From Vitrella brassicaformis CCMP3155 (lineage: Eukaryota > Protista > Chromerida): a stretch of DNA of 64,000 nucleotides. The notes below the pieces were generated by a model. It had not been told where the DNA came from. It ran no database searches and saw only the letters and a program-made list of their open reading frames with translations. Within the stretch, counting starts at the first letter, position 1, and each line of letters opens with the position of its first letter. The position numbers and the translations under genes were made by a program. Where the stretch lies: the NCBI GenBank assembly GCA_001179505.1, contig CDMY01000406.1, forward strand, positions 1-64,000, written 5' to 3'. This document shows, in pieces, positions 5,990 to 21,807 of the stretch.

Positions 5990-6804
5990 CTCTCCCCCCT
6001 GCAGCTGCTGGTGGTGGTGGTGGCCCCGCCCCTGCAGGTTACCACACCGCCCACACCCCTCCCCCCCGCCACCGCACACTTGCCTGATGGACGACCCCCA
6101 CGTGTGTGTCATGCCTTGTGTGTCAGGACTGATTCTGTGGTGCAGGTGGACAGGGTGGCGGCCTCTTTACAGATGCGATGTGTGATTGAACCTTTACCTT
6201 CAAGGCGGTCGGTGTGCAATCTCTGTCTGCCTGTCTACAGTCTGTCTGTGTGTGTGTGCGCATACAGACAGGGATTGAGGGAGGGAGGGGGGGATTGAGG
6301 GAGGACATCGGTGTGTGCGTGGCGTCTGCCTGCTGCCTTGCTGGGCCGCTTCATGGATGGATGGATGGTGTGTGTCTGCCTGTCACGCTCATGGCGAAGC
6401 CGACGGTGTGCCCGGCGGACCAACAGCAGCTCGCTCGTCCATTCATTTGTCTCTGTGCCGGGCTGCATTCATGAGTCGATGGACAGCCACAGAAACACAT
6501 GCAGTGAAAGCTTGGCTGGCCAGCCTTCATCCAACACACACACACGCACGCAAAGAAGTCGCCGAGCCGTTGGCTGTCGGTGTGTCTCTCGAAGGATACA
6601 TACATAGGTTATCCATCCCATCTATCGTGAGTGAGTGAGTCTCACATCTCCATCAACGCAAAAATAGCAAACAGACCCCTCACTCACGGCACATACCCGA
6701 CTGCAACTCATCGCATCCATGTCCTATCCTGCAGGCGCACGTACTACCACGCCATCAGAATGCCCTATGTCTTGGACTTTGTCTTGTGTGTCCCACGATG
6801 GATG

Positions 6805-9800
6805 TTAGTCGCCTCTGTGATGCCTCCTGTCCGGCCGCTCTGAAGGACGACTCTCCTGGCTTCTCACTGTGCTCAGCCGCGAGGCCAAGGCACGGAGCTC
6901 CGCTTGCGCCTCACGATGCTCGTCGGCAGCTGAGACACACAACATACACACACACACACACACACACAAAGACTCATCTGACTTCTTCGGGCTGTTCGTG
7001 TCTCTGTTGCTTACCGGCCATGTCAGCCGTCTTTGCCTCCAGCAGCTGGTATATGCGGCGAAGGAGAGCATCGCCAGCCGCGTTGAAGGTGGAGGCCGAG
7101 TACATGCAGCTCTGCGATATGATGTAAAAGCCCGGCGAGGGAATCAGATAAGCGCCGCTGCCATCTGGAGAGGGAAACACAGAGACACACATGTAACCCG
7201 CCAGTGTCATGACACTGTGTGCCAGTCGTGTCTTGCCTTGAGGATGATCCCAGGCGGCTCTTTGTCGATTGCCATCATTGAACAGAACACGCAGATTCTG
7301 ACAGGGCAGACCACACGATGACCGACACAAGGTGCCGACTGTGTTCTGCATCTTCTGACCTCGTGCCAGGCCATCGAGACGTGAAAGAGGTCTCCCCCGC
7401 CCTCTGGAACGCCCTCACACCTCACACCGGGGGAAAGAGTCCACTTCTCCTCCCTCACTCCGCTGTCGGAAATCTCGTCTGCTCGTCGATAGTGGCAGCG
7501 GGGATACATCCAGCTGGTCGTGTACAGGATGTGGGCCCTCTTCGCTGTTTTTGCCTCCTTGTCGAGCAGCGACAGAATGTCTGAAGGAGACAGGGAGGAT
7601 TTTGCAGCCGACTGTTTTTTTCATTTTTGGTCGTTTCTCACCGAGACAGGCCTCACGAGCGATCATATCCTCGCACCAGAGTGTGTGGACAACGCCTTCA
7701 TTCAACAGATGGACGCCCTCCTGCTCGATGGAATAGTAGCCCCCTGACGCGCCAAACAGACCGAGACACAGAGACTGATGTTCTCTTCTTTGCTTGATGG
7801 CTGGATGAGTGGCGCTGGCCTTACGTCTTCCGTCAGTGCCGACGGGCGCATCCAACACTTTCTCCCTGCCACCCTCGGTGATGCCCATCACGAAGCACAT
7901 TGACTGAAAGAGAAGGCAGGCAGCCCGACAACAATTCGTGCCCGGCTGTCGGCCTTGATGTGTCTCGGCTCACCTTCTGCTCGATGTGAGCATACCACAG
8001 CTCATTCGTTAGCTGGAGACACTCCTTGCTGTCCAGACGATGCTTTGACGGATCCGATCCTATAAAGCCGACGACATACTCACACTTCAGTTGTATCTGC
8101 TCGCTATTGCCGCTGCTGCTGCTGTTGTTGCTGCTGCTAGCGCTGCTGGCGCTGCTGCTGCTATTGCCGCTGCTGCTGGCGCTGCTGGCGCTGTTGCCGC
8201 TATTGACGCTGCTGCTGGCGCTGCTGGCGCTGCTGGCGCTGCTGGTGCTGCTGCCGCTGTAGCTTGACTTGAGTTTGTAGTAGAGGTGCAGCCCCGGCTG
8301 ATGGAGGTCTCTTGTATCGTGATCCTGCAACATCACGACAACTGACACAAACGTGTCTTTTCCTTCGTACTGTATTTCTAACCTGATGCCACGGGGCGGC
8401 CGAGTCGAACGTCGCTTGCTGTGCTTCCGCTTGCTGTGCTTCGGCAGTTCTCGATGCGGTGGGCTGGTCGGGTGAGTTGACCGGCCGGAGACGGATGAGC
8501 TGATTGGGCTTGACCAGGGAACGTATCCGGGCCCATATGTCCTCCGGGGAGATGTCGGACAGCCTTCTGACAGCCTTCCGCAACTCCTTGATCTTCACGA
8601 GAAGTGGTTCGATCTTCGCACTTGACGTCGCTCTCGCCACGCTGAACAGCAAGAGTCGAGTCTATCAGGTGCATTTTTCGTGGCTTTTCTGTTACACTCA
8701 CGTGTCGGTTGCCCTGGCCGTTGAGTGTGAAGGCGAGCTGGGTGGTGGGGAGCTGGGCGGCAGGCTCGGTCGCTCGGTCGCCCTGGTCCTGCAGCCAGCC
8801 ACATCAACAAGCAGAGAGACCCCATGACACGATTCTCACCCATACCCTTGAATTGGCTTACGTGTCGCTGGCCATCGGTGAGACCGCTGCGCTGGGCCTT
8901 GCGAAGGGGCCAGCTACAACAACCACACGACAAGACAGACACAGATGATCAATCACTTTATCGCATTTGTGCCGCACCTGAGGCCTCTCTCAACGCGGCG
9001 CTCAGGCCAGGAACAACAAACTGGAGAAGGTCCTGCCGATAATGACGAAGAGACTCCGGCCGCAGGAGTTCTCCGTCAACCAGCAAGTACAGGCCTGCGC
9101 CTCGGAGAATGTAGTTGCCACCTGCAGACATACGCAAAACACACCACAGTGACAAGCAGAGAAGGATATCCAGGCCGTGTGGTTCTTCCTTCACCTCCTG
9201 GAGCGTGATCCCAAGAGCCGCTCCCGTTATTTAGGACGAACTCGAGACCCTGAGTATTGATTGGCAAACATGTTTGCACATTTCACCCACGAAAGACGAG
9301 TCACTGCGTGGATCCCTGTGCGGTGTGCAGCTTACGCTATGGAATGGCATTTGCGCATGCCATACACAGCGGTCGTCGGAAAACGTATTGCACACGATGC
9401 CTGGAGGGTCTGTCCAGCGGCCGTCGGCGGGCTTTTGGAAGTGGATGCGGGGCGACGTCCAGCCGGTGAAGTAGAGAAGGTGCGCCTCTGCTACGCCGCG
9501 CGCCGCCTTGTCGAGGATACACAGCCGGTCTGACGAACAAACAGCTTGTGAAAAACCGTGTGTCTCTCATCGATCAGCTTCTTACCGACATAATCCACAT
9601 TACACCTCAGGACGTCCAGGCGTCCGTCTTGGAGAAGACACACGCCTTCCGCTGGGGCGCTGTAATTGGGTTCTGAGAGTAGCACAGCAGAGGCGCAAGC
9701 AATTTGGATGACGGCGTCTGTCGTTCTGAAGCGCTCACTTCCTGTGAGTGACGGAGGATTGTCCCACTCAGTGTGACTTGCGTCACACATGACAAAGTCG

Positions 9801-10318
9801 GCGGCCTGCATGCACCAAGGCATCCTCTTACATTGACTTTCCTGCCTTTGCCTCCCACGCCCCTGCTTACCTGGTGCTGAATGTGCAGATACCACAGCCC
9901 TCCCTCAAGCGACACGCACTCACGGTCAGCCCACTCGGCCGACCCCTGCCGGCTGTAGTGGCATACTGGGCAGTGCCAGCCCGACCGGTACAGCTGAGAA
10001 GATCAACACACAGCACACAACAGACACAAGGTCAGACGTCTTAGTGCCTGTCAGAAGCTGTCTCCCCATCTCTGCCCGTGAGGGTACTGACGATGTGGAT
10101 GCCGGGCCTCCTGATATCCACCTGGACGCACAGAACACAGCACGTGGGAGTCGTGTCGCCGTACCCCCATGCATCCCAATAGTCACCTCGTTACGGCTGA
10201 TGTTGACGCCTTGCCACACGTCGTGTGGCAGCAGGGAGCCGAGCTGCGCCAACTTGAGGGCGGTGGGGCTTTCCAGAGAGAGCTTGGTCCGGTCGATGAG
10301 GTCCTTGAAACTCGTCAT
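6805..10318 (-). CDS. Non-catalytic protein with four CBM25-like (starch-binding-type) modules, copy 1, apparently intact
   Basis: Spliced modules: (1) LYRSGWHCPVCHYSRQGSAEWAD...DFVMCDASHTEWDNPP...NYSAPAEGVCLLQDG; (2) LLYFTGWTSPRIHFQKPADGRWTDPPG...LEFVLNNGSGSWDHAPGGNYILRGAGLYLLVDG; (3) degenerate LHLYY...MCFVMGITEGGREKVLDAPVG...GYYSIEQEGVHLLNEG; (4) HILYTTSWMYPRCHYRR...WTLSPG...LRVLFNDGNRQRAAWDHPQ...GAYLIPSPGFYIIS. The pattern matches the CBM25 consensus from memory. Confidence 0.65.
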
Positions 10319-10415
10319 CGGGGAAGGGAGAATCATTCAAACTTCGGAGACTGGGGGCTGCTGGGGGCTAGTACCACTGGCAGGAGACGCCACTGGCAGC
10401 CTCGTGAGTCGACTG

Positions 10416-10628
10416 ATGCCCCGCAGCGGCGTCAAATCGCAGGATGTCGGCATCTCCATCCCTTTGGTCCTCTTCCTCTGCTCCATCCTGCTGCTCTTTT
10501 CCCTCCCGCCCTCCTGCCTCACTGAGGCATTCACGTCCCTGCCGGTGGTGTCGGTCAACACAACCCTCTACTACCCCGCCGGCAACGGGTCGGCGTGTCT
10601 GGTCGACCGCAGTATCATGTTTGCCATG
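10416..10628 (+). pseudogene. 5' fragment of the solute-binding-protein-like gene, truncated at ...SIMFAM
   Basis: Matches 22075-22287, then switches to an inverted piece of exon 2. Confidence 0.8.
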
Positions 10629-10718
10629 CATGGAAACTGGGCGTTGCCAACCTGACACACCTTTCTCGACCTCTCGCTGCAAGTGGCGCCGGTGGGTGGG
10701 TGGGTGTCCACGAGTGGG

Positions 10719-11018
10719 NNNNNNNNNNNNNNNNNNNNNNNNNNNNNNNNNNNNNNNNNNNNNNNNNNNNNNNNNNNNNNNNNNNNNNNNNNNNNNNNNN
10801 NNNNNNNNNNNNNNNNNNNNNNNNNNNNNNNNNNNNNNNNNNNNNNNNNNNNNNNNNNNNNNNNNNNNNNNNNNNNNNNNNNNNNNNNNNNNNNNNNNNN
10901 NNNNNNNNNNNNNNNNNNNNNNNNNNNNNNNNNNNNNNNNNNNNNNNNNNNNNNNNNNNNNNNNNNNNNNNNNNNNNNNNNNNNNNNNNNNNNNNNNNNN
11001 NNNNNNNNNNNNNNNNNN
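10719..11018. other. Assembly gap (300 N)
   Basis: Run of N. Confidence 1.
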
Positions 11019-11650
11019 AGAGGCGCAAGCAATTTGGATGACGGCGTCTGTCGTTCTGAAGCGCTCACTTCCTGTGAGTGACGGAGGATTGTCCCACTCA
11101 GTGTGACTTGCGTCACACATGACAAAGTCGGCGGCCTGCATGCACCAAGGCATCCTCTTACATTGACTTTCCTGCCTTTGCCTCCCTCGCCCTGCTTACC
11201 CTTTACTGAATGTGCAGATACCACAGCCCTCCCTCGAGCGACAGGCACTCACGGTCAGCCCACTCGGCCGACCCCTGCCGGCTGTAGTGGCATACTGGGC
11301 AGTGCCAGCCCGACCGGTACAGCTGAGAAGATCAACACACAGCACACAACAGACACAAGGTCAGACGTCTTAGTGCCTGTCAGAAGCTGTCTCCCCATCT
11401 CTGCCCGTGAGGGTACTGACGATGTGGATGCCGGGCCTCCTGATATCCACCTGGACGCACAGAACACAGCACGTGGGAGTCGTGTCGCCGTATTCCCATG
11501 CATCCCAATAGTCACCTCGTTACGAGGGCCGATGTCGACGCCTTGCCACACGTCGTGTGGCAGCAGGGAGCCGAGCTGCGCCAACTTGAGGGCGGTGGGG
11601 CTTTCCAGAGAGAGCTTGGTCCGGTCGATGAGGTCCTTGAAACTCGTCAT
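11019..11650 (-). pseudogene. 5' fragment of the 4xCBM25-like gene with in-frame TAA (11203-11205); possibly an assembly duplicate
   Basis: Repeats about 9680-10318 and 17520-18153; abuts the N gap. Confidence 0.65.
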
Positions 11651-11747
11651 CGGGGAAGGGAGAATCATTCAAACTTCGGAGACTGGGGGCTGCTGGGGGC
11701 TAGTACCACTGGCAGGAGACGCCACTGGCAGCCTCGTGAGTCGACTG

Positions 11748-11960
11748 ATGCCCCGCAGCGGCGTCAAATCGCAGGATGTCGGCATCTCCATCCCTTTGGT
11801 CCTCTTCCTCTGCTCCATCCTGCTGCTCTTTTCCCTCCCGCCCTCCTGCCTCACTGAGGCATTCACGTCCCTGCCGGTGGTGTCGGTCAACACAACCCTC
11901 TACTACCCCGCCGGCAACGGGTCGGCGTGTCTGGTCGACCGCAGTATCATGTTTGCCATG
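11748..11960 (+). pseudogene. Second 5' fragment of the solute-binding-protein-like gene
   Basis: Matches 10416-10628, with the same junction. Confidence 0.75.
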
Positions 11961-12466
11961 CATGGAAACTGGGCGTTGCCAACCTGACACACCTTTCTCG
12001 ACCTCTCGCTGCAAGTGGCGCCGGTGGGTGGGTGGGTGTCCACGAGTGGGCGTCTTCGTGTGTGCATTTGTTTTCCTGTTGTGTGTCTGTTCAGTCGCTG
12101 CAGAGTGTGTCGCTCTTTTTGTGTGTGGAGAGCTACTTCGGCGAAGAGACGCTCGAAGGGAGAGAGGTAAACAGAGTACAAGTCTGTTTGTGTGTCTCAA
12201 CCAACGTGTGTGGTGCAATGGGTCCACGGATGCCCGGCCGGTCATCAGGAGTATTCCTGTGGGGCAAGCAAAAGAGACGGGTGCGTTTAGAAGGCACTAA
12301 TATGACACACACGATCGACTGTCCACCACACAGGCGACCAAGTAGCTGTCGGTCACTCATGCGCCGGAGATGCTCTTCTTGCACATCAAACGGTATCTCA
12401 CACAGACAGACAGACACACAGCCACACAGCCACACATACCTCTCATTCTGCCGTCTTTCGCCTCAG

Positions 12467-13567
12467 GCCGGCCAGCACATTGGCCTATTTGACCTGCTGC
12501 CGGACGTCGAGCGTGACGTCTTCTTCGCTCTGCTCGGCCCCGACGGCCTCGCCCGCCTCCGGCGCACCTGCACACTCGGCAGCCAGCGCGTGTCGGAGGC
12601 CTATGTCAAGACGCAGATCGATGCACTTCTCGTCGACAAGGGCCTCCAGGACATCCTCAGCTACGACCTGCCATCCGTCGGTCATCTGCTGCGGCTCCTG
12701 CACATCATCCAGCAGAGCGGCGAGTGGGCGGCCATGGTGGCCATCATCAGAGTGGCTGTGCATCAGGGGCGGGGGGGAGGGCAGTTGCCGATAGAGCTGG
12801 GCGAGGCTGATGTGGAGGCGTTGGACGGCCGGGCAGTGTTTGAGGGGCGGTGTGAGGCGCTGCGCCAGCTCTCACTCATCGGCCGGCACATCGGCCTGCC
12901 GCTGTGGCTCGTCAACAGCGAGGAGGTGCTGGGTTGTCGGTCGTATGGTGAGCGAGGTGGGAATACCTATGGGCAACGGATCATTTGGTTGCGTGTCTGT
13001 GTGTCTGCAGGTCGGGAGTTTGCGTCAGTCCGCGACGGTGTCCTGGACAGGTGAGAGATGAGTGGTAGGGGTACACATTGGCTGCCCCGCTCTGCCGTGA
13101 TGTGCCTGATCAGGATGGGTCGGGGAGGGTCGGAGGTCGCCCGTCAGTATGTCTACCAGGGCAACGATGCCACACGCCTCAACCGACTGGTCAGCAAGGA
13201 ACACACGACTGCCTCAGCAGCCGCCCCACTCGCTCATTGTCATATCTCACTTTCTCTTCAGCGGCAGCTCGCCACTCAGGAGCTGCCCATCTGGAACTGC
13301 CACACCATCAGCACCTGCCTGGCACCAGAAGGCTTCTATCGAATGATAGTGCTGCATGGCGACCAGCCGGATGACAGATTCACGGCCCACATCGACATCT
13401 TCAGCTGCCACATCGATGCCCACGCCTTCCTCCACACGACGGAGCGTCCGGTGGATGGCAGGAAGGGAGCGGTCAGGTTCCCCGAGACAGTGAGGGTCGT
13501 GCATGAGGTGATGGGAGCCGACGCACAGGTGGCGTTCGGCAACCAACTGGCCGTAGAGGTAGACTAG
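12467..13567 (+). CDS. Lineage-specific family member with F-box-like N-terminus (5' exons not resolved)
   Basis: GLFDLLPDVERDVFFALLGPDGLARLRRTC...GRGGGQLPIEL...CEALRQLSLIGRHIG; last exon ...FLHTTERPVDGRKGAVRFPETVRVVHEVMGADAQVAFGNQLAVEVD*. Confidence 0.75.
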
Positions 13568-13889
13568 AACAACTCATCTCTCAAATGCCGACTGTACAGA
13601 CGGCCTCCCTGTCTGTCTGCCCACGGCAGCAGATGGCAGGCAGGCGTGTTCGAGAGACTGACGGATGGATACCTTGGTGGACGGTGTGTGAGTCTGCGTG
13701 ATGGGACGGAGTGGATGGCGTCCTTCAGTGGGTGACGGATTTTCTTATATAACGGGATACAATGGAGGTTCTCTCTCCCCACAGAAACATATTCACCAGT
13801 CAATCCGACTCGTCTGTTCACACATAGTGTGCGACGCTAGCCTGCAGGGGCGGGGCCAACAGCACCAGCAGCTTTGCTGTCTCCTGACG

Positions 13890-16800
13890 CTGTCTCAACA
13901 CCGCCCACACCCCTCACCCCAGCCCCCCCGCCCCGTTACCACACACGCGCCTCATGCCTTCAAGTTGTGTGTCAGGACTGAATCTGTGCTGCAGGTGGAC
14001 AGGGTGGCGGACTGTGTACACATGCGATGTGTGATTGAACCTTTACCTTCAAGGCGGTCGGTGTGCAATCTCTGTCTGTCTGCCTGTCTGCAGTCTGTCT
14101 GTGTGTGTGTGCGCATACAGACAGGGATTGAGGGAGGGAGGGGGGGATTGAGGGAGGACATCGGTGTGTGCGTGGCGTGTGCCTGCTGCCTTGCTGGGCC
14201 GCTTCATGGATGGATGGTTGGTGTGTGTCTGCCTGTCACGCTCATGGCGAAGCCGACGGTGTGCCCGGCGGACCAACAGCAGCTCGCTCGTCCATTCATT
14301 CGTCTCTGTGCGGGGCTGGCTGCATTCATGAGTCGATGGACAGCCACAGACAGACAAACACATGCAGTGATTCAAAGCTTGGCTGGCCAGTTTTCATCCA
14401 ACACACACACACACACACGCAAAGAAGTCGCCGAGCCGTTGGCTGTCGGTGTGTCTCTCGAAGGATACATACATAGGTTATCCATCCCATCTATCGTGAG
14501 TGAGTGAGTGAGTCTCACATCTCCATCAACGCAAAAATAGCAAACAGACCCCTCACTCACGGCACAAACCCGACTGCAACTCATCGCATCCTATCCTACA
14601 GGCGCACGTACTACCACGCCATCAGAGTGCCCTATGTCTTGGTCTTGTGTGTCCCACGATGGATGTTAGTCGCCTATGTGATGCCTCCTGTCCGACCGCT
14701 CTGAAGGACGACTCTCCTGGCTTCTCACTGTGCTCAGCCGCGAGGCCAAGGCACGGAGCTCCGCTTGCGCCTCACGATGCTCGTCGGCAGCTGAGACACA
14801 CAACACACACACACATACACACACATACACAAGGACTCATCTGACTTCTTCGGGCTGTTCGTGTCTCTGTTGCGTACCGGCCATGTCGGCCGTCTTTGCC
14901 TCCAGCAGCTGGTATATCCGGCGAAGGAGACCATCTTCAGCCGCGTTGAAGGTGGAGGCCGAGTACATGCAGCCCTGCGATATGATGTAAAAGCCCGGCG
15001 AGGGAATCAGATAGGCGCCGCTGCCATCTGGAGAGGGAAACACAGAGACACACATGTAACCCGCCAGTGTCATGACACTGTGTGCCAGTCGTGTCTTGCC
15101 TTGAGGATGATCCCAGGCGGCTCTTCGTCGATCGCCATCATTGAATAGAACACGCAGATTCTGACAGGGCAGACAACACGATGACCGACACAAAGGTGCC
15201 GACTGTGTCCTTATGCGTCTTCTGACCTCGTGCCAGGCCATCGAGACGTGAAAGAGGTCTCCCCCGCCCTCTGGCACCCCCTCACACCTCACACCGGGCG
15301 AAAGGGTCCACTTCTCCTCCCTCACCCCGCTGTCGGAAATCTCGTCTGCTCGTCGATAGTGGCAGCGGGGATACATCCAGCTGGTCGTGTACAGGATGTG
15401 GGCCCTCTTCGCTGTTTTTGCCTCCTTGTCGAGCAGCGACAGAATGTCTGAAGGAGACAGGGAGGATTTTGCAGCCGACTGTTTTTTTCATTTTTGGTCG
15501 TTTCTCACCGAGACAGGCCTCACGAGCGATCATGTCCTCGCACCAGAGTGTGTGGACAACGCCTTCATTCAACAGATGGACGCCCTCCTGCTCGATGGAA
15601 TCGTAGCCCTCTGACGCGCCAGCAAACCGAGACTGATTTTCTCTTCTTTGCTTGATGGCTGTATGAGTGCCGCTGGCCTTACGTTTTCCGTCAGTGCCGA
15701 CGGGCGCATCCCACTCTTTCTCCCTGCCCCCCTCGGTGATGCCCATCACGAAGCACATTGACTGAAAGAGAAGGTAGGCAGCCCGACAACAACCGTACCC
15801 AGCTGTCCGCCTTGATGTGTCTCGGCTCACCTTCTGCTCAACATGACCATACCACAGCTCATTCGTTAGCTGGAGACACTCCTTGCTGTCCAGACGATGC
15901 TTTGACGGATCCGATCCTATAAAGCCGACGACATACTCACACTTCAGTTGCATCTGCTCGCTATTGCCGTTGCTGCTGCTGTTGTTGTTGCTGCTGCTAT
16001 TGCCGCTGCTGCTAGCGCTGCTGTTGCTGTTGCCGCTGTTGCCTGACTTGAGTGTGTAGTAGAGGTGCAGCCCCGGTCGCTGGAGGTCTCTTGTATCGTG
16101 ATCCTGCAACATCACGACAACTGACACAAACGTGTCTTTTCCTTCGTATTTCTAACCTGCTGCCATGGGGCGGCCAAGTCAAACGTCGCTTGCTGTGCTT
16201 CCGCTTGCTGTGCTTCGGCAGTTCTCGATGCGGTGGGCTGGTCGGGTGGGCTGGTCGGGTGAGCTGACCGGCCGGAGGCGGATGAGCTGATTGGGTTTGA
16301 CCAGGGAACGTATCTGGGCCCATATGTCCTCCGGGGAGATGTCGGACAGCCTTCTGACAGCCTTCCGCAAATCCTTGATCTTCACGAGAAGTGGTCCGAT
16401 CTTCGCACTTGGCGTCGCTCTCGCCATGCTGAACAGCAGGAGTCGAGTCTATCAGGTGCATTTTTCGTGGCTTTTCTGTTACACTCACGTGTCGGTTGCC
16501 CTGGCCGTTGAGTGTGAAGGCGATGTGGAAGGCGAGCTGGGTGGTGGGGAGCTGGGCGGCAGGCTCGCTCGCTCGCTCGCTCGGTCGCCCTGGTCCTGCA
16601 GCCAGCCAGGTAGGTCAACAAGCAGATAGACCACATGCCACGATTCCCTCTCAGCATTTCAGCAGCAGTCTTGGCTTTCCTTACGTGTCGCTGGCGGTGG
16701 GCGAGACCGCTGCGCTGGGCGTCACGAAGGGGCCAGCTACAACAACGACACGACAAGAGAGACACAGATGATCAACCACTTTATCGCATTTGTGTCGCAC

Positions 16801-18468
16801 CTGAGGCCTCTGCCAGTGCGGCTCTCAGGTCAGGGACGACAGACTGGAGAAGGTCCTGCCGATGATGACGAAGAGACTCCGGCCGCAGGATTTCTCCGTC
16901 AACCAGCAAGTACAGGCCTGCGCCTCGGAGAACGTAGTTGCCACCTGCAGGCATACGCAAAACGCACCACAGTGACAAGCAGAGAAGGATATCCAGACCG
17001 TGTGGTTCTTCCTTCACCTCCTGGAGCGTGATCCCAAGAGCCGCTCCCGTCATTTAGGACGAACTCGAGACGCTGAGTGGAGACACATACACATTTGGCA
17101 TAAGAGAAAGCACATTTCACCCACTCGTGGGTCTCTGTGCGGTGTGCACTGCAGCTTACGCTATGGAATGGCATTTGCGCATGCCACACACAGCGGTCGG
17201 AAAACGCATTGCACACGATGCCTGGAGGGTCTGTCCAGCGGCCGTCGGTGGGCTTTTGGAAGTGGATGCGGGGCGACGTCCAGCCGGTGAAGTAGAGAAG
17301 GTGCGCCTCTGCTACGCCACGCGCCGCCTTGTCGAGGATACACAGCCGGTCTGACGAACAAACAAGCAGCTGGATTCACGATGAAAAACCCTGTGTCTCT
17401 CATCGATCAGCTTCTTACCGACATAATCCACGTTACACCTCAGGACGTCCAGCCTTCCGTCTTGGAGGAGGTACACGCCGTCCGCGGTGGCGCTGTAATT
17501 GAGTTCTGAGAGTAGCACAGCAGAGGCGCAAGCAATTTGGATGACGGCGTCTGTCGTTCTGAAGCGCTCACTTCCTGTGAGTGACGGAGGATTGTCCCAC
17601 TCAGTGTGACTTGCGTCACACATGACAAAGTCGGCGGCCTGCATGCACCAAGGCATCCTCTTACATTGACTTTCCTGCCTTTGCCTCCCTCGCCCTGCTT
17701 ACCCTTTACTGAATGTGCAGATACCACAGCCCTCCCTCGAGCGACAGGCACTCACGGTCAGCCCACTCGGCCGACCCCTGCCGGCTGTAGTGGCACACTG
17801 GGCAGTGCCAGCCCGACCGGTACAGCTGAGAAGATCAACACACAGCACACAACAGACACAAGGTCAGACGTCTCAGCGCCTGTCAGAAGCTGTCTTCCCA
17901 TCTCTGCCCGTGAGGGTACTGACGATGTGGATGCCGGGCCTCCTGATATCCACCTGGACGCACAGAACACAGCACGTGGGAGTCGTGTCGCCGTATTCCC
18001 ATGCATCCCAATAGTCACCTCGTTACGAGGGCCGATGTCGACGCCTTGCCACACGTCGTGTGGCAGCAGGGAGCCGAGCTGCGCCAACTTGAGGGCGGTG
18101 GGGCTTTCCAGAGAGGGCTTGGCCCGGTCGATGAGGTCCTTGAAACTCGTCATCGGGGGAGGGAAGGGAGAATCATTCAAACTTCGGAGACTGGGGGCTG
18201 CTGGGGGCTAGTACCACTGGCAGGAGACGCCACTGGCAGCCTCGTGAGTCGACTGATGCCTCGCAGCGGCGTCAAATCGCAGGATGTCGGCATCTCCATC
18301 CCTTTGGTCCTCTTCCTCTGCTCCATCCTGCTGCTCTTTTCCCTCCCGCCCTCCTGCCTCACTGAGGCATTCACGTCCCTGCCGGTGGTGTCGGTCAACA
18401 CGACCCTCTACTACCCCGCCGGCAACGGGTCGGCGTGTCTGGTCGACCGCAGCATCATGTTTGCCATG
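13890..18468. repeat. Segmental duplication copy B
   Basis: Aligns with 6040-10628. Confidence 0.95.
14666..18153 (-). pseudogene. 4xCBM25-like gene, copy 2, with premature TAA in module 1
   Basis: Copy 1 reads CAC ATT CAG CAC CAG|gt; this copy reads CAC ATT CAG TAA AGG|gt (17706-17708). The other exons look conserved. Confidence 0.65.
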
Positions 18469-19347: not shown

Positions 19348-19537
19348 GTTGAATTCGAGAGCCCCGGGATCCATCTCGTGAGCTCATGGGGGAAAATTTA
19401 ATGAGGAGACTGGCTGAGCCATCTGAAATTTTGAATGTGTTGGTTGTTTTCAGTTGTATATGTCGGCCTGACAGCCCCCCGTGTGCCACTTCAGGGGCGA
19501 CAAGGGCGACTGGAGCGACAAGGAGTGCGTCCAGCCG
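19348..19537 (+). pseudogene. Relic CBM25-like exons on the + strand
   Basis: cag|VEFESPGIHLVSS resembles VDIRRPGIHIVST; cag|LYMSA*QPPVCHFRGDKGDWSDKECVQP|gtaagt resembles LYRSGWHCPVCHYSRQGSAEWADRECVSL, with TGA at the conserved Trp. Confidence 0.6.
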
Positions 19538-20005: not shown

Positions 20006-21807
20006 TCAGTCAGACAGACCTGGCACCACCGTCCCCCTGTCGATGACGTCACGCTCGAGACCGAATGGCCGCAGCACACGGCGGACGGCACCAATCGACT
20101 CGGGGAAGCGCTGGGTTAGCGATGCCGGCGCATCAGCAGCAAATCGCTCGGTCGTGTACAGACAGATGCGGCCAAACCCCACCCACAGAAAGGCGGCGAC
20201 GGTCTCGTTGGGTCTGAAGCCGCTCACTATCACACGACACTCGTGACTCGCATTTCCATAAGGCAGATTGACCTGGTCGTAGCGATAGTCCACGGCGGCG
20301 ATGCCCAGATCCTCTGTGATGCCCTCGGTCAGCAGACGGCCATACCGAGGGTCATCACGGCCGATATCTGCATAGACCACAATCTTCGCATCCACCCCAT
20401 GCTCGTAGCACCACCTCCAGAGCAGCCCGTTGAACAGGAATGATGAGAATGAGGGGAACAGAAAGTAGTACCAGCGGATGGCGGGGTCGGTCCGCTTGTA
20501 GCCGTTGGTGTAGCGATGGCCGCTCGGCAGATCACCTAATGGCACCACATGAAACGAGTCATTGCCGATCCTATAGCCCCCATTGTCGGCTTGCTGCAGC
20601 GCCAGGCTGAGCACTCCATGTGTCAGCATATGGCCGATGACCCTGTAGATGGCCATTGCGATCGGCAGTTGATGGAAGGCCGTTGCTGTGGGCAGCGAGT
20701 TGGCCGACAGCCAAAGGGGCCGCGTCGTGTTGGCGGGGGTCAGTCGATAGATGAAGGCCAGTCGAAGAAACCGCCCCAACGACCGCCACTCCTCACCGCT
20801 GCCCTGCTCCAGCAGCCAGACGAATCTCAAGCCGCCCTCCACGTCACCATCAATGTCGAAGGCCAAGACGTCCTCCAAGCCGAGACGCCTGATGGCCCTG
20901 TCGATGTGCTGCTGGACGCCGTTGAGCAGCGTGCTGGTGACGGTCGTCGGGGTGTGGCCCAGCAGCTCCTGTTGCCTGAGGCCTGTGACAGCGACACAGA
21001 CACGACCAGCTGATGACAATTGGCACATGTATGTATTGGTTGTACTTGGAGCCTTCTTCAATGCAGCATCGACGCCACGATTGACGAGCGGCAACAGATG
21101 TTGTCGCTGGCGGAGATCGACGGGGCGGAGGACGGCCCCGTCGATGACGAAATAGAGTCCCGACTCGCGAAGGACATAGTTGCAGCCTGCACACACAAAA
21201 GACACCCAGAAACAGAGAAAGAAAGCATTCAAGGAGCTCGTCTTCATTCATCACCCCACCTCCAGGGACATGATCCCAGCAGCCCTTTCCGTCAGTGAAG
21301 ACAAACTCGAGGAATGAAAGCAAAACAAGCTGATCTATCAGACGAATGATGCATTGTCTCTCCGTGCGATGTACAGCTTACGGCATGTGACGGCACGACC
21401 GCATGGAATACCCCGTCGGCACCAAATGCATCACACTGGACGCCGGGAGGTGTTGTCCAGCGGCCGCTGGGCCTCTTGAAGTGGATGTTTGGTGAAGTCC
21501 AGCCGGTGAAGTACAGGATGTGCATCTTTGCCACGCCCCGAGACGTCTGGTCGATGTCATACAGTAGATCTGAGGAAAGAAGGGAGTTGCGAAAGATTCC
21601 CAGCAGCTCCTGTTGCTGAGTGCGGGTGACGATCTGTGAGCGGAGAGCGGCTCGCGTGGCATTGTCAGTCGACATGGCCATGCGGGCCATCTTGCTGATG
21701 GGCAAAGACATGTCAAAGAGGTCGGCGGGCTGGAAGAGGGCATCGCTGGGGGGCTGCGACGAGGGCGCTGCACCAGTGGGCTGCATCAGTCGTGATTGTG
21801 GGGTCAT
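20006..21807 (-). CDS. Chimeric protein: one CBM25-like module fused to a large lineage-specific domain ending LYTTE...RFP
   Basis: HILYFTGWTSPNIHFKRPSGRWTTPPGVQC | LEFVFTDGKGCWDHVPG | CNYVLRESGLYFVIDG, then VQQHIDRAIRRLGLEDVLAFD...RICLYTTERFAADAPASLTQRFPESIGAVRRVL. Confidence 0.75.

What the first reader, a model, noticed from the sequence alone, without database searches (positions are those of the whole stretch)
6805..10318. Catalytic-domain-free protein with four tandem CBM25-like modules
After splicing, four repeats share the pattern LY-x-(S/T)-x-W-x-x-P-x-x-H(Y/F)...W...FV-x-x-(N/D)-G...WD-x-P...Y-x-x-x-x-x-G-x-x-L-L-x-x-G; module 3 is degenerate. No signal peptide and no hydrolase, kinase or phosphatase domain is visible. 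The repeats are invisible in the ORF track because each is split over 3-4 exons. Inference: a cytosolic starch-granule scaffold or targeting protein, functionally analogous to plant PTST proteins (which use CBM48).
Basis: partly seen in the sequence, partly recalled or inferred. Interest (0 to 1): 0.75.

Follow-up and report, generated by a model that had tools for sequence, protein, structure and literature searches.

The report
Enzyme-free four-module starch-binding protein
An intact 18-exon gene of the alga Vitrella brassicaformis encodes a protein with no export signal, made of four CBM25 starch-binding modules (three keep the sugar-binding residues) and no enzyme domain: a plausible but untested starch-granule adaptor from a fast-duplicating gene family seen so far only in Vitrella.

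Summary
On the minus strand, 10318..6805, 18 exons join into a 772-residue open frame. All acceptors are AG; 16 donors are GT and one is GC. It holds four repeats, each split over three exons at the same places and phases. Three repeats (M1, M2, M4) are true CBM25 modules. A profile of their first halves hits only CBM25 structures in the PDB (2C3V, E 6.7e-11). A near-identical paralogue passes Pfam's CBM_25 cut-off. A paralogue's module folds confidently (pLDDT 90.5) onto 2C3V. The binding triad His/Trp/Trp is kept in M1, M2 and M4 and lost in M3. No signal peptide, membrane segment or catalytic domain was found.

The scaffold role, PTST-like, is inference only. The gene belongs to a tandemly duplicating family found only in Vitrella. 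One member fuses two such modules to a USP deubiquitinase. The neighbouring copy C carries a stop codon and frameshifts. UniProt already auto-names that copy a CBM25 protein, but I found no public model with all four modules.

The scan noted related CBM25 genes before on other DNA of this genome (s1-199359, s1-221727).

Verdict: new member of a known kind, of moderate interest.

The parts
6805..10318 (-). Coding region of the four-module gene (copy A): 18 exons, 772 codons plus stop. Exons, high to low: 10318-10187, 10121-10092, 9993-9871, 9805-9739, 9672-9586, 9529-9336, 9249-9195, 9121-8978, 8913-8862, 8788-8702, 8641-8383, 8324-7974, 7903-7825, 7743-7642, 7580-7360, 7297-7237, 7164-7015, 6929-6805
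   Evidence: open frame, splice signals; same junctions as the public paralogue model P0001; all splice sites kept in copy C
10104..10318 (-). N-terminal region, residues 1-50. Not hydrophobic. Its motif is shared with paralogues P0002, P0003 and P0008. Function unknown.
   Evidence: no Pfam match
9611..10103 (-). Module M1 (residues 51-138; end of exon 2 plus exons 3-5). CBM25 of the M1 type; platform residues H66, W74, W109.
   Evidence: 19.3 bits, E 5.6e-8 against an HMM of 402 non-Vitrella CBM25 modules; 52.6 bits with the iterated HMM
9060..9488 (-). Module M2 (residues 161-250; exons 6-8). The best-preserved CBM25; platform residues H176, W185, W224.
   Evidence: Pfam CBM_25 on exon 6 alone, E 5.8e-4; 50.7 bits against the non-Vitrella HMM. 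The same module in paralogue P0001 scores 33.6 bits in Pfam (cut-off 27.3) and aligns to 2C3V residues 10-98
8301..9059 (-). Linker (residues 251-418; exons 8-12 in part): helix-prone stretch, Pro/Ser-rich low-complexity stretch, and the exon 11 segment with an Ala/Gln-rich run. No domain found.
   Evidence: Exon 11 is also present in paralogue models P0015 and P0019. The frame of exon 10 is the least certain part of the model.
7679..8300 (-). Module M3 (residues 419-575; exons 12-14). A degenerate CBM25 of the M1 type. The platform positions are E492, L507 and L544 in place of His, Trp, Trp.
   Evidence: z 13.3 against M1; not detected by CBM25 HMMs
8103..8270 (-). Poly-Ser loop inside M3, encoded by a (GCT)n repeat. 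Exon 12 is 78 nt longer here than in copy C.
7097..7539 (-). Module M4 (residues 602-704; exons 15-17). CBM25 of the M2 type; platform residues H617, W634, W677. The intron after exon 16 has a GC donor.
   Evidence: 29.0 bits, E 5.3e-11 against the non-Vitrella HMM; weak Pfam CBM26 match on the same module of P0001
6808..7096 (-). C-terminal tail (residues 705-772), charged and predicted helical.
   Evidence: Long helix 543-586 in the AlphaFold2 model of P0001, at low confidence; no Pfam match
10319..10415 (.). 97-bp spacer between this gene's ATG and the ATG (10416) of the divergent plus-strand gene. That gene begins with a strongly hydrophobic, signal-peptide-like stretch (read by eye). Candidate bidirectional promoter (inferred).
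   Evidence: the unit is repeated at 13965-18468

Best explanation
The gene encodes a non-catalytic, most likely cytosolic, multivalent alpha-glucan (starch)-binding protein. Three modules (M1, M2, M4) are intact CBM25 beta-sandwiches. Each should bind one alpha-1,4-glucan chain on a His/Trp/Trp platform. Single CBM25 modules bind granular starch weakly, so three on one chain should bind tightly through avidity. M3 is a decayed module that now serves as a spacer with a poly-Ser loop.

Shown: gene structure, CBM25 identity, kept binding residues, and absence of an enzyme domain or signal peptide.

Inferred: starch binding, cytosolic location, and a role as an adaptor that coats or bridges granule surfaces and presents its helical linker and tail to partner proteins.
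For: - Intact 18-exon frame with canonical splice signals, using the same junctions as the public paralogue model.
- A profile of the first halves of the modules hits only CBM25 structures among 177,635 PDB sequences: 2C3V at E 6.7e-11, 2LAA and 2LAB at about 1e-7.
- Paralogue P0001 is over 90% identical to this gene across the modules. It passes the Pfam CBM_25 cut-off, 33.6 against 27.3 bits. It aligns to nearly all of 2C3V, residues 10-98 of 102, at E 3.1e-8.
- An HMM built only from 402 non-Vitrella CBM25 modules finds M1, M2 and M4 at full length: 19.3, 50.7 and 29.0 bits.
- A paralogue's M2-type module folds at pLDDT 90.5. Its eight best PDB matches are all CBM25 (TM 0.59-0.78 on the target's length; 0.71-0.78 for the 2C3V-type crystal chains), followed by CBM26.
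- The 2C3V binding residues are W34, W74, H26, D81 and N76 (PMC4625611). The His/Trp/Trp equivalents are unchanged in all 13 detected Vitrella modules, although the paralogues are only 44-78% identical to the model.
- CBM25 has a single site, and tandem modules raise affinity about 50-fold (PMC3398936). A tandem CBM25 targets proteins to starch granules in potato (PMC5715617).
- No signal peptide or membrane segment. Vitrella starch is cytosolic.
- dN/dS between copies A and C is 0.47, with synonymous changes in excess (37.5 observed against 22.6 expected; my chi-square from the call's counts is about 12.8). Copy A is intact while copy C is broken.
Against: - No binding, localisation or expression data exist for this copy.
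- The polar contacts differ from 2C3V: N76 is His in M2 and M4, and D81 is Asn or Ala.
- M1 and M4 fall below Pfam's cut-off.
- The fold was predicted for a paralogue's module (about 50% identical to M2), with bacterial CBM25 sequences in its alignment, so it leans towards that fold.
- The whole-protein model failed, at pLDDT 38.
- Lineage-specific constraint on copy A alone is not significant: 7 synonymous against 10 non-synonymous changes.
- The scaffold role has no direct support.
Confidence: 0.55

Rival explanations
1. A recent duplicate in a birth-and-death family, with little or no function of its own. It is intact by luck or gene conversion and is on the way to decay like its neighbours.
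For: - Copy C, only 5-9% diverged, has a stop in exon 3 and frameshifts in exons 10-11.
- Relic exons with stops lie nearby, at 12325-12453 and 19430-19531.
- M3 has lost its binding residues, more so in copy A than in C, where the WD tryptophan survives.
- No transcript was found.
- No public protein model of 330-1050 residues for copy A turned up.
- Constraint on the A lineage alone is not significant.
Against: - 772 codons and 34 splice signals are intact.
- Overall dN/dS is 0.47, with a clear excess of synonymous changes.
- The His/Trp/Trp triad is unchanged in every detectable module of all paralogues.
Confidence: 0.15
2. The CBM25 fold has been put to another use. The modules bind a different glycan or a protein, and serve as a general interaction cassette unrelated to starch.
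For: - Polar ligand contacts differ from bacterial CBM25.
- The two-module cassette is fused to unrelated partners: a USP peptidase in P0002 and an orphan domain in P0010.
- The family was found only in Vitrella.
- The gene sits head to head with a gene that begins with a signal-peptide-like hydrophobic stretch.
Against: - The aromatic platform that defines alpha-glucan recognition in CBM25 and CBM26 is strictly kept.
- The nearest outside relatives of the modules sit on alpha-amylases.
- Asn at the D81 position is in fact the consensus of the family.
Confidence: 0.15
3. A regulator within a granule-targeted ubiquitin system. The enzyme-free protein competes with, or docks, the paralogue that joins two CBM25 modules to a USP deubiquitinase on the same glucan surface.
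For: - P0002 (CEM03528.1) has M1- and M2-type modules followed by a complete UCH/USP domain, 150 bits.
- The N-terminal motif is shared.
- An earlier scan note, s1-199359, reads the same locus this way.
Against: Pure inference from paralogy. No ubiquitin-related feature exists in this protein. The USP-like pieces next to it are short, and one of them contains a stop.
Confidence: 0.1

Closest known systems
BhCBM25 of Bacillus halodurans alpha-amylase G-6 (PDB 2C3V, 2C3W, 2C3X) and the CBM25 modules of Paenibacillus polymyxa beta/alpha-amylase (2LAA, 2LAB)
   Same: Same family by sequence and predicted fold. About 32% identity for the M2 type. The His26/Trp34/Trp74 platform and Asp75 are kept.
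   Different: The bacterial modules are secreted and attached to amylases. Here the protein has no export signal, no enzyme and introns within each module. N76 is replaced by His in two modules.
Protist alpha-amylases built as CBM25 x2-4, FN3 x2 and a GH13 domain with the plant-type C-terminal domain (P0042 from EukProt; P0134 from transcript-sized contigs)
   Same: Their CBM25 modules form the sister group of the Vitrella modules in the module tree (parent support 0.89).
   Different: They carry a catalytic domain. In Vitrella, the gene best matching P0134's catalytic part, on contig C189, shows no CBM25 beside it. The Vitrella modules stand alone or are fused to other partners.
Plant PTST1, PTST2 and PTST3 (and FLO6)
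   Same: Analogy of design: a non-catalytic protein with a starch-binding module plus helical segments. In plants these bring enzymes to granules (my own knowledge, not tested here).
   Different: PTST proteins use one CBM48 and are plastid-targeted. No CBM48 match here. Not homologous.
Bacterial enzyme-free multi-CBM25 proteins (for example P0005: 691 residues, six CBM_25 and nothing else) and starch-adherence proteins such as Sas6 (PDB 7UWU)
   Same: An array of starch-binding modules without a catalytic domain. Sas6 appears among the weak fold matches.
   Different: Those are presumably bacterial surface or secreted proteins for starch capture (my inference; P0005 comes from a 337-kb ENA contig). 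This one is eukaryotic and intracellular.
Vitrella paralogue P0002 (CEM03528.1): two CBM25 modules plus a USP deubiquitinase. Animal laforin-malin and STBD1 serve as functional parallels.
   Same: Same N-terminal motif and the same M1 and M2 module types, 44% identity over 300 residues. It links a glucan-binding cassette to another activity, as laforin (CBM20) does for glycogen (my own knowledge).
   Different: The gene studied here has a second module pair in place of the enzyme.

Membership tests
CBM25 (CAZy family 25; Pfam PF03423) | Sequence match to the family profile above the curated cut-off | tested here: met
   Paralogue P0001, over 90% identical across the modules, scores 33.6 bits against a cut-off of 27.3 for M2. 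The window's own exon 6 alone scores 20.6 bits, E 5.8e-4. The joined model, used only in local scripts, scores 19.3, 50.7 and 29.0 bits for M1, M2 and M4 against an HMM of 402 non-Vitrella CBM25 modules. M3 is not detected.
CBM25 (CAZy family 25; Pfam PF03423) | Beta-sandwich fold like 2C3V | tested here: met
   AlphaFold2 model of the M2-type module of the paralogue in this window (transcript contig L010): pLDDT 90.5. The top eight PDB matches are all CBM25 (TM 0.59-0.78, rmsd 2.3-3.6 A; 0.71-0.78 and 2.3-2.7 A for the 2C3V-type chains). This gene's own modules could not be folded, because the joined sequence has no reference.
CBM25 (CAZy family 25; Pfam PF03423) | Ligand platform His26/Trp34/Trp74 (2C3V numbering) | tested here: met
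   M1: H66, W74, W109. M2: H176, W185, W224. M4: H617, W634, W677. M3 has E492, L507, L544, so the feature is not met there.
CBM25 (CAZy family 25; Pfam PF03423) | Demonstrated binding to starch or malto-oligosaccharides | not testable with these tools
   Needs recombinant protein and binding assays.
PTST family (plant Protein Targeting To Starch) | A CBM48 module | tested here: not met
   No CBM48 or AMPK-type glycogen-binding match on any exon or paralogue protein. 1Z0N appears only as a weak fold match, TM 0.43-0.53.
PTST family (plant Protein Targeting To Starch) | Coiled coil that binds a starch synthase; plastid location | not tested
   Only a low-confidence predicted C-terminal helix. 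No transit or signal peptide.
CBM53 (starch synthase III type) and CBM26 | A better match to these profiles than to CBM25 | tested here: not met
   No PF16760 match in the gene; the genome's one match is on contig C587. CBM26 gives only a sub-threshold match on M4, 16.5 bits against a cut-off of 28.1.

The most novel reading that the evidence does not exclude
The M1-M2 pair of CBM25 modules is a portable starch-granule address tag that Vitrella has copied onto several partners: a USP deubiquitinase, an orphan domain, and a second copy of itself. Together these proteins would form a granule-surface network found only in Vitrella. The four-module protein would act as its scaffold or competitor. 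The network might relate to the amylose-containing starch that lies tightly against the pyrenoid, a feature that sets Vitrella apart from Chromera.
Probability: 0.2. Interest if true: 0.6.

Novelty: new member of a known kind. Interest (0 to 1): 0.35.

Why it matters
Starch metabolism in chromerids, dinoflagellates and apicomplexans is being mapped enzyme by enzyme (bioRxiv 10.64898/2026.09.25.754361). Non-enzymatic granule proteins of these lineages are hardly known. This gene gives a concrete, testable candidate: an intracellular protein with three intact CBM25 sites. It also shows that the public annotation misses the full architecture. The annotated paralogue is truncated because that copy is broken. 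If the protein binds granules, the family, including its USP fusion, would offer a way to study how proteins are brought to cytosolic starch in relatives of the apicomplexan parasites. If it does not, this is one more lineage-specific gene expansion.

Tried and rejected
1. The joined 772-residue model has no reference, so it was never sent to a database, family or folding tool. Searches went exon by exon or through paralogue proteins. The joined sequence was used only inside local scripts built from window coordinates.
2. Pfam on single exons gave only one partial CBM_25 match (exon 6), because each module is split.
3. AlphaFold2 on P0001 with a 13-row alignment failed (pLDDT 38.3) and was not used for fold search.
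4. cDNA evidence: a protein-guided scan and an exact exon 14/15 junction pattern in metagenome contigs found nothing.
5. The word-based homologue search with P0001 found only three Vitrella proteins. Low-complexity words may have crowded the candidate list.
6. Pfam on the open frames of the plus-strand neighbour (11736-14504) gave nothing. An F-box-like motif that I saw by eye was not confirmed.
7. An apparent likeness between the C-terminal domain of P0010 and the neighbour gene was not supported by tblastn.
8. I first took the 1-kb repeat flanking the N gap (9689-10718 against 11019-12050, 98.5%) for an assembly overlap. The second copy carries copy-C-like residues in exon 1, so it is more likely the head of a separate copy.
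9. One protein-atlas call and two Pfam calls failed because the chosen frames contained stops. I did not read through them.
10. No complex prediction was run, because no specific partner is claimed.
Full report
**Where we are.** The window is contig C406 of a 72.7-Mb assembly in 1064 contigs. Exact look-ups name the organism as Vitrella brassicaformis CCMP3155. It is a photosynthetic relative of the apicomplexans and stores starch in the cytosol (bioRxiv 10.64898/2026.09.25.754361). The DNA is about 58% G+C with many short introns.

**The gene.**
- Three-frame reading of the minus strand and a coordinate-based check give 18 exons between 10318 and 6805.
- They join into 2319 nt, that is 772 codons and a TAA stop, with no internal stop.
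- Every acceptor is AG behind a pyrimidine tract. Sixteen donors are GT and one (after exon 16) is GC. Introns are 56-98 nt.
- The public model of the neighbouring paralogue (P0001 = CEM10919.1) uses the same junctions wherever the two overlap, including the GC donor.
- The frame through exon 10, in the low-complexity linker, is the least certain part. Its junction to exon 11 recurs in paralogue model P0019.
An in-frame ATG also lies at 10336.

**A limit on method.** The joined protein has no reference, so I sent it to no search, family or folding tool. Those steps were done exon by exon, or with paralogue proteins that the databases returned. The joined sequence was used only in local scripts.

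**The repeats are real.**
- Pairwise local alignment of the four segments against 300 shuffles gives z = 15.5 (M1-M2), 20.2 (M2-M4), 13.3 (M1-M3) and 7.7 (M1-M4). M3 resembles only M1.
- So the protein is a duplicated pair: M1 and M2, then M3 (M1 type) and M4 (M2 type).
- Each module is encoded by three exons, with a phase-0 and then a phase-1 intron at matching positions. The duplication therefore came after the introns.
- M3 holds a 56-residue poly-Ser loop encoded by a (GCT)n repeat at 8108-8259. Exon 12 is 78 nt shorter in the paralogue.

**The repeats are CBM25 modules.**
- A profile of the first halves of seven Vitrella modules (A1) finds exactly three sequences in the PDB, all CBM25: 2C3V at E 6.7e-11, and 2LAA and 2LAB near 1e-7.
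- Against 1.84 billion representative proteins, the same profile finds 248 proteins at E up to 0.001. Seven of the 19 best are Vitrella paralogues. The five non-Vitrella hits from the top nine that I scanned in Pfam are multi-domain proteins full of Pfam CBM_25 modules.
- P0001 is over 90% identical to our gene across the modules. It passes the Pfam CBM_25 cut-off (33.6 against 27.3 bits, module M2).
- P0001 also aligns to residues 10-98 of the 102-residue 2C3V chain at E 3.1e-8.
- To avoid circularity I built an HMM from 402 non-Vitrella modules only. It finds M1 (19.3 bits), M2 (50.7) and M4 (29.0) at full length in the joined model, and does not find M3.
- The M2-type module of the paralogue at 20474-21786 can be referenced without introns on a transcript-like contig (L010). 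AlphaFold2 folds it at pLDDT 90.5.
- The eight best PDB matches of that model are all CBM25 (TM 0.59-0.78 on the target's length; 0.71-0.78 for the 2C3V-type crystal chains). CBM26 comes next.
- That alignment contained bacterial CBM25 sequences, so the model leans towards their fold. Even so, sequence and predicted fold agree.

**Binding site.**
- In 2C3V the ligand is held by W34, W74, H26, D81 and N76 (PMC4625611).
- By the alignments, the His/Trp/Trp platform is H66/W74/W109 in M1, H176/W185/W224 in M2 and H617/W634/W677 in M4.
- M3 has E492/L507/L544 at these positions.
- The triad is unchanged in all 13 detectable modules of the Vitrella paralogues, which are only 44-78% identical to the model.
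- N76 is Asn in M1 and His in M2 and M4. The D81 position is Asn in M1 and M2, which is the family consensus, and Ala in M4.

**What is absent.**
- No exon and no paralogue protein of this architecture matches any catalytic family.
- The N-terminus is not hydrophobic and there is no membrane segment.
- The divergent neighbour gene starts only 97 bp upstream, so there is little room for a further 5' exon.

**Family and surroundings.**
- The gene (copy A) lies in a tandem array. A 4.5-kb unit, 6116-10628, recurs at 13965-18468 with 92-94% identity, introns included.
- The head of another copy sits at 11070-11650, beside an N gap. A one-module chimera lies at 20474-21786.
- Each unit is head to head with a plus-strand gene that opens with a signal-peptide-like hydrophobic stretch.
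- Further copies lie on C406 beyond the window and on C479, C343 and C386.
- Copy C has a stop codon in exon 3 and frameshifts in exons 10 and 11. This explains why its public model starts in exon 4 and skips most of the linker.
- Copy A is the only intact four-module frame in the window. No public protein of 330-1050 residues corresponds to it.
- Between A and C, introns differ by 5.2%. dS is 0.076 and dN is 0.036, giving a ratio of 0.47 with a clear excess of synonymous changes.
- Polarising the changes with a third copy gives too few events to separate the two lineages: A has 7 synonymous and 10 non-synonymous, C has 7 and 9.
- One paralogue, P0002 (CEM03528.1), joins M1- and M2-type modules to a complete USP deubiquitinase.

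**Origin.** In a tree of 415 CBM25 modules, the 13 Vitrella modules form one clade (support 0.95). Its sister group comes from transcript-sized contigs and a EukProt transcriptome, so these are probably protist sequences. Two of the four source proteins (P0042, P0134) encode alpha-amylases with CBM25, FN3 and GH13 domains; the other two showed only CBM25. In Vitrella, the gene best matching P0134's catalytic part, on C189, shows no CBM25 beside it.

**How it most likely works.**
- A single CBM25 binds granular starch weakly: Kd is about 30 micromolar for BhCBM25. Two modules in tandem (CBM25 with CBM26) bind about 50 times tighter (PMC3398936).
- CBM25 has one site and recognises single alpha-glucan chains of both amylose and amylopectin. 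A tandem CBM25 carries fusion proteins onto starch granules in potato (PMC5715617).
- A protein with three intact sites and no export signal, in a cell whose starch is cytosolic, should therefore sit on granule surfaces. This is inference.
- Whether it merely coats, bridges granules or recruits partners through its helical linker and tail is open.
- The PTST comparison is a fair analogy of design but not a family relationship.

**Rivals.** The rivals are a decaying duplicate, a cassette put to a non-starch use, and a role beside the USP paralogue. They are listed with their tests in the rival explanations.

**Novelty.** UniProt already auto-names the truncated paralogue a CBM25 domain-containing protein. 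Enzyme-free CBM25 arrays also exist in other organisms (P0005, presumably bacterial). The finding is thus a new member of a known kind. What is new is the full four-module architecture in a eukaryote, the degenerate third module, and the family context.

**Earlier notes of this scan.** s1-212061, s1-212271, s1-199359 and s1-221727 touch the same family on this and other DNA of the genome. I used them as leads only.

Noticed in passing
window 14666-18153 (-): Paralogue copy C is 91-94% identical to copy A, introns included. Under the same splicing it has a stop codon in exon 3 and frameshifting insertions in exons 10 (+20 nt) and 11 (+13 nt). Its public model CEM10919.1 therefore begins in exon 4.
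   Followed up: yes
window 11019-12050, beside the N gap 10719-11018: Head of a further copy (exons 1-4 plus the divergent promoter). It is 98.5% identical to the heads of both copies A and C, with copy-C-like residues in exon 1. Its 3' part is missing, probably in the gap.
   Followed up: partly
window 10416 onward (+); also about 11741, 18249 and 22068 (+): Divergent neighbour gene whose product starts with a strongly hydrophobic, signal-peptide-like stretch. It recurs with each CBM25 unit. Its ATG is 97 bp from the CBM25 gene's ATG. No Pfam match on its open frames.
   Followed up: partly
window 12089-12199 and 12325-12453 (+): Short stretches 53-62% identical to residues 522-585 of the USP domain of paralogue P0002. 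The second contains a stop, so they look like relics of a USP gene.
   Followed up: partly
window 19430-19531 (+): An M1-type first-half exon on the opposite strand, 65% identical to P0002 residues 59-92 and containing a stop codon. A stray, decayed CBM25 fragment.
   Followed up: no
window 20474-21786 (-); locus L010: Chimera gene with one M2-type CBM25 module and an orphan C-terminal domain. Its spliced product (P0010) lies uninterrupted on an 1859-nt JGI contig (sample 3300017148), which I take for a transcript, so this gene is probably expressed.
   Followed up: partly
G000:C343 about 70.9-71.1 kb (protein P0002): Two CBM25 modules fused to a complete ubiquitin-specific peptidase (Pfam UCH, 150 bits). 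A possible glucan-targeted deubiquitinase.
   Followed up: partly
L009 = G000:C587:44071-46762: The only Pfam CBM53 match in the genome (28.7 bits, over the cut-off), perhaps part of a type III starch synthase. Distinct from the CBM25 family.
   Followed up: no
G000:C386:87.3-89.6 kb (L001, L007, L008): At least three more CBM25-like first-half exons of two sequence types near a contig end, with an N gap. They look like a further multi-module gene; I did not check for a public model.
   Followed up: no
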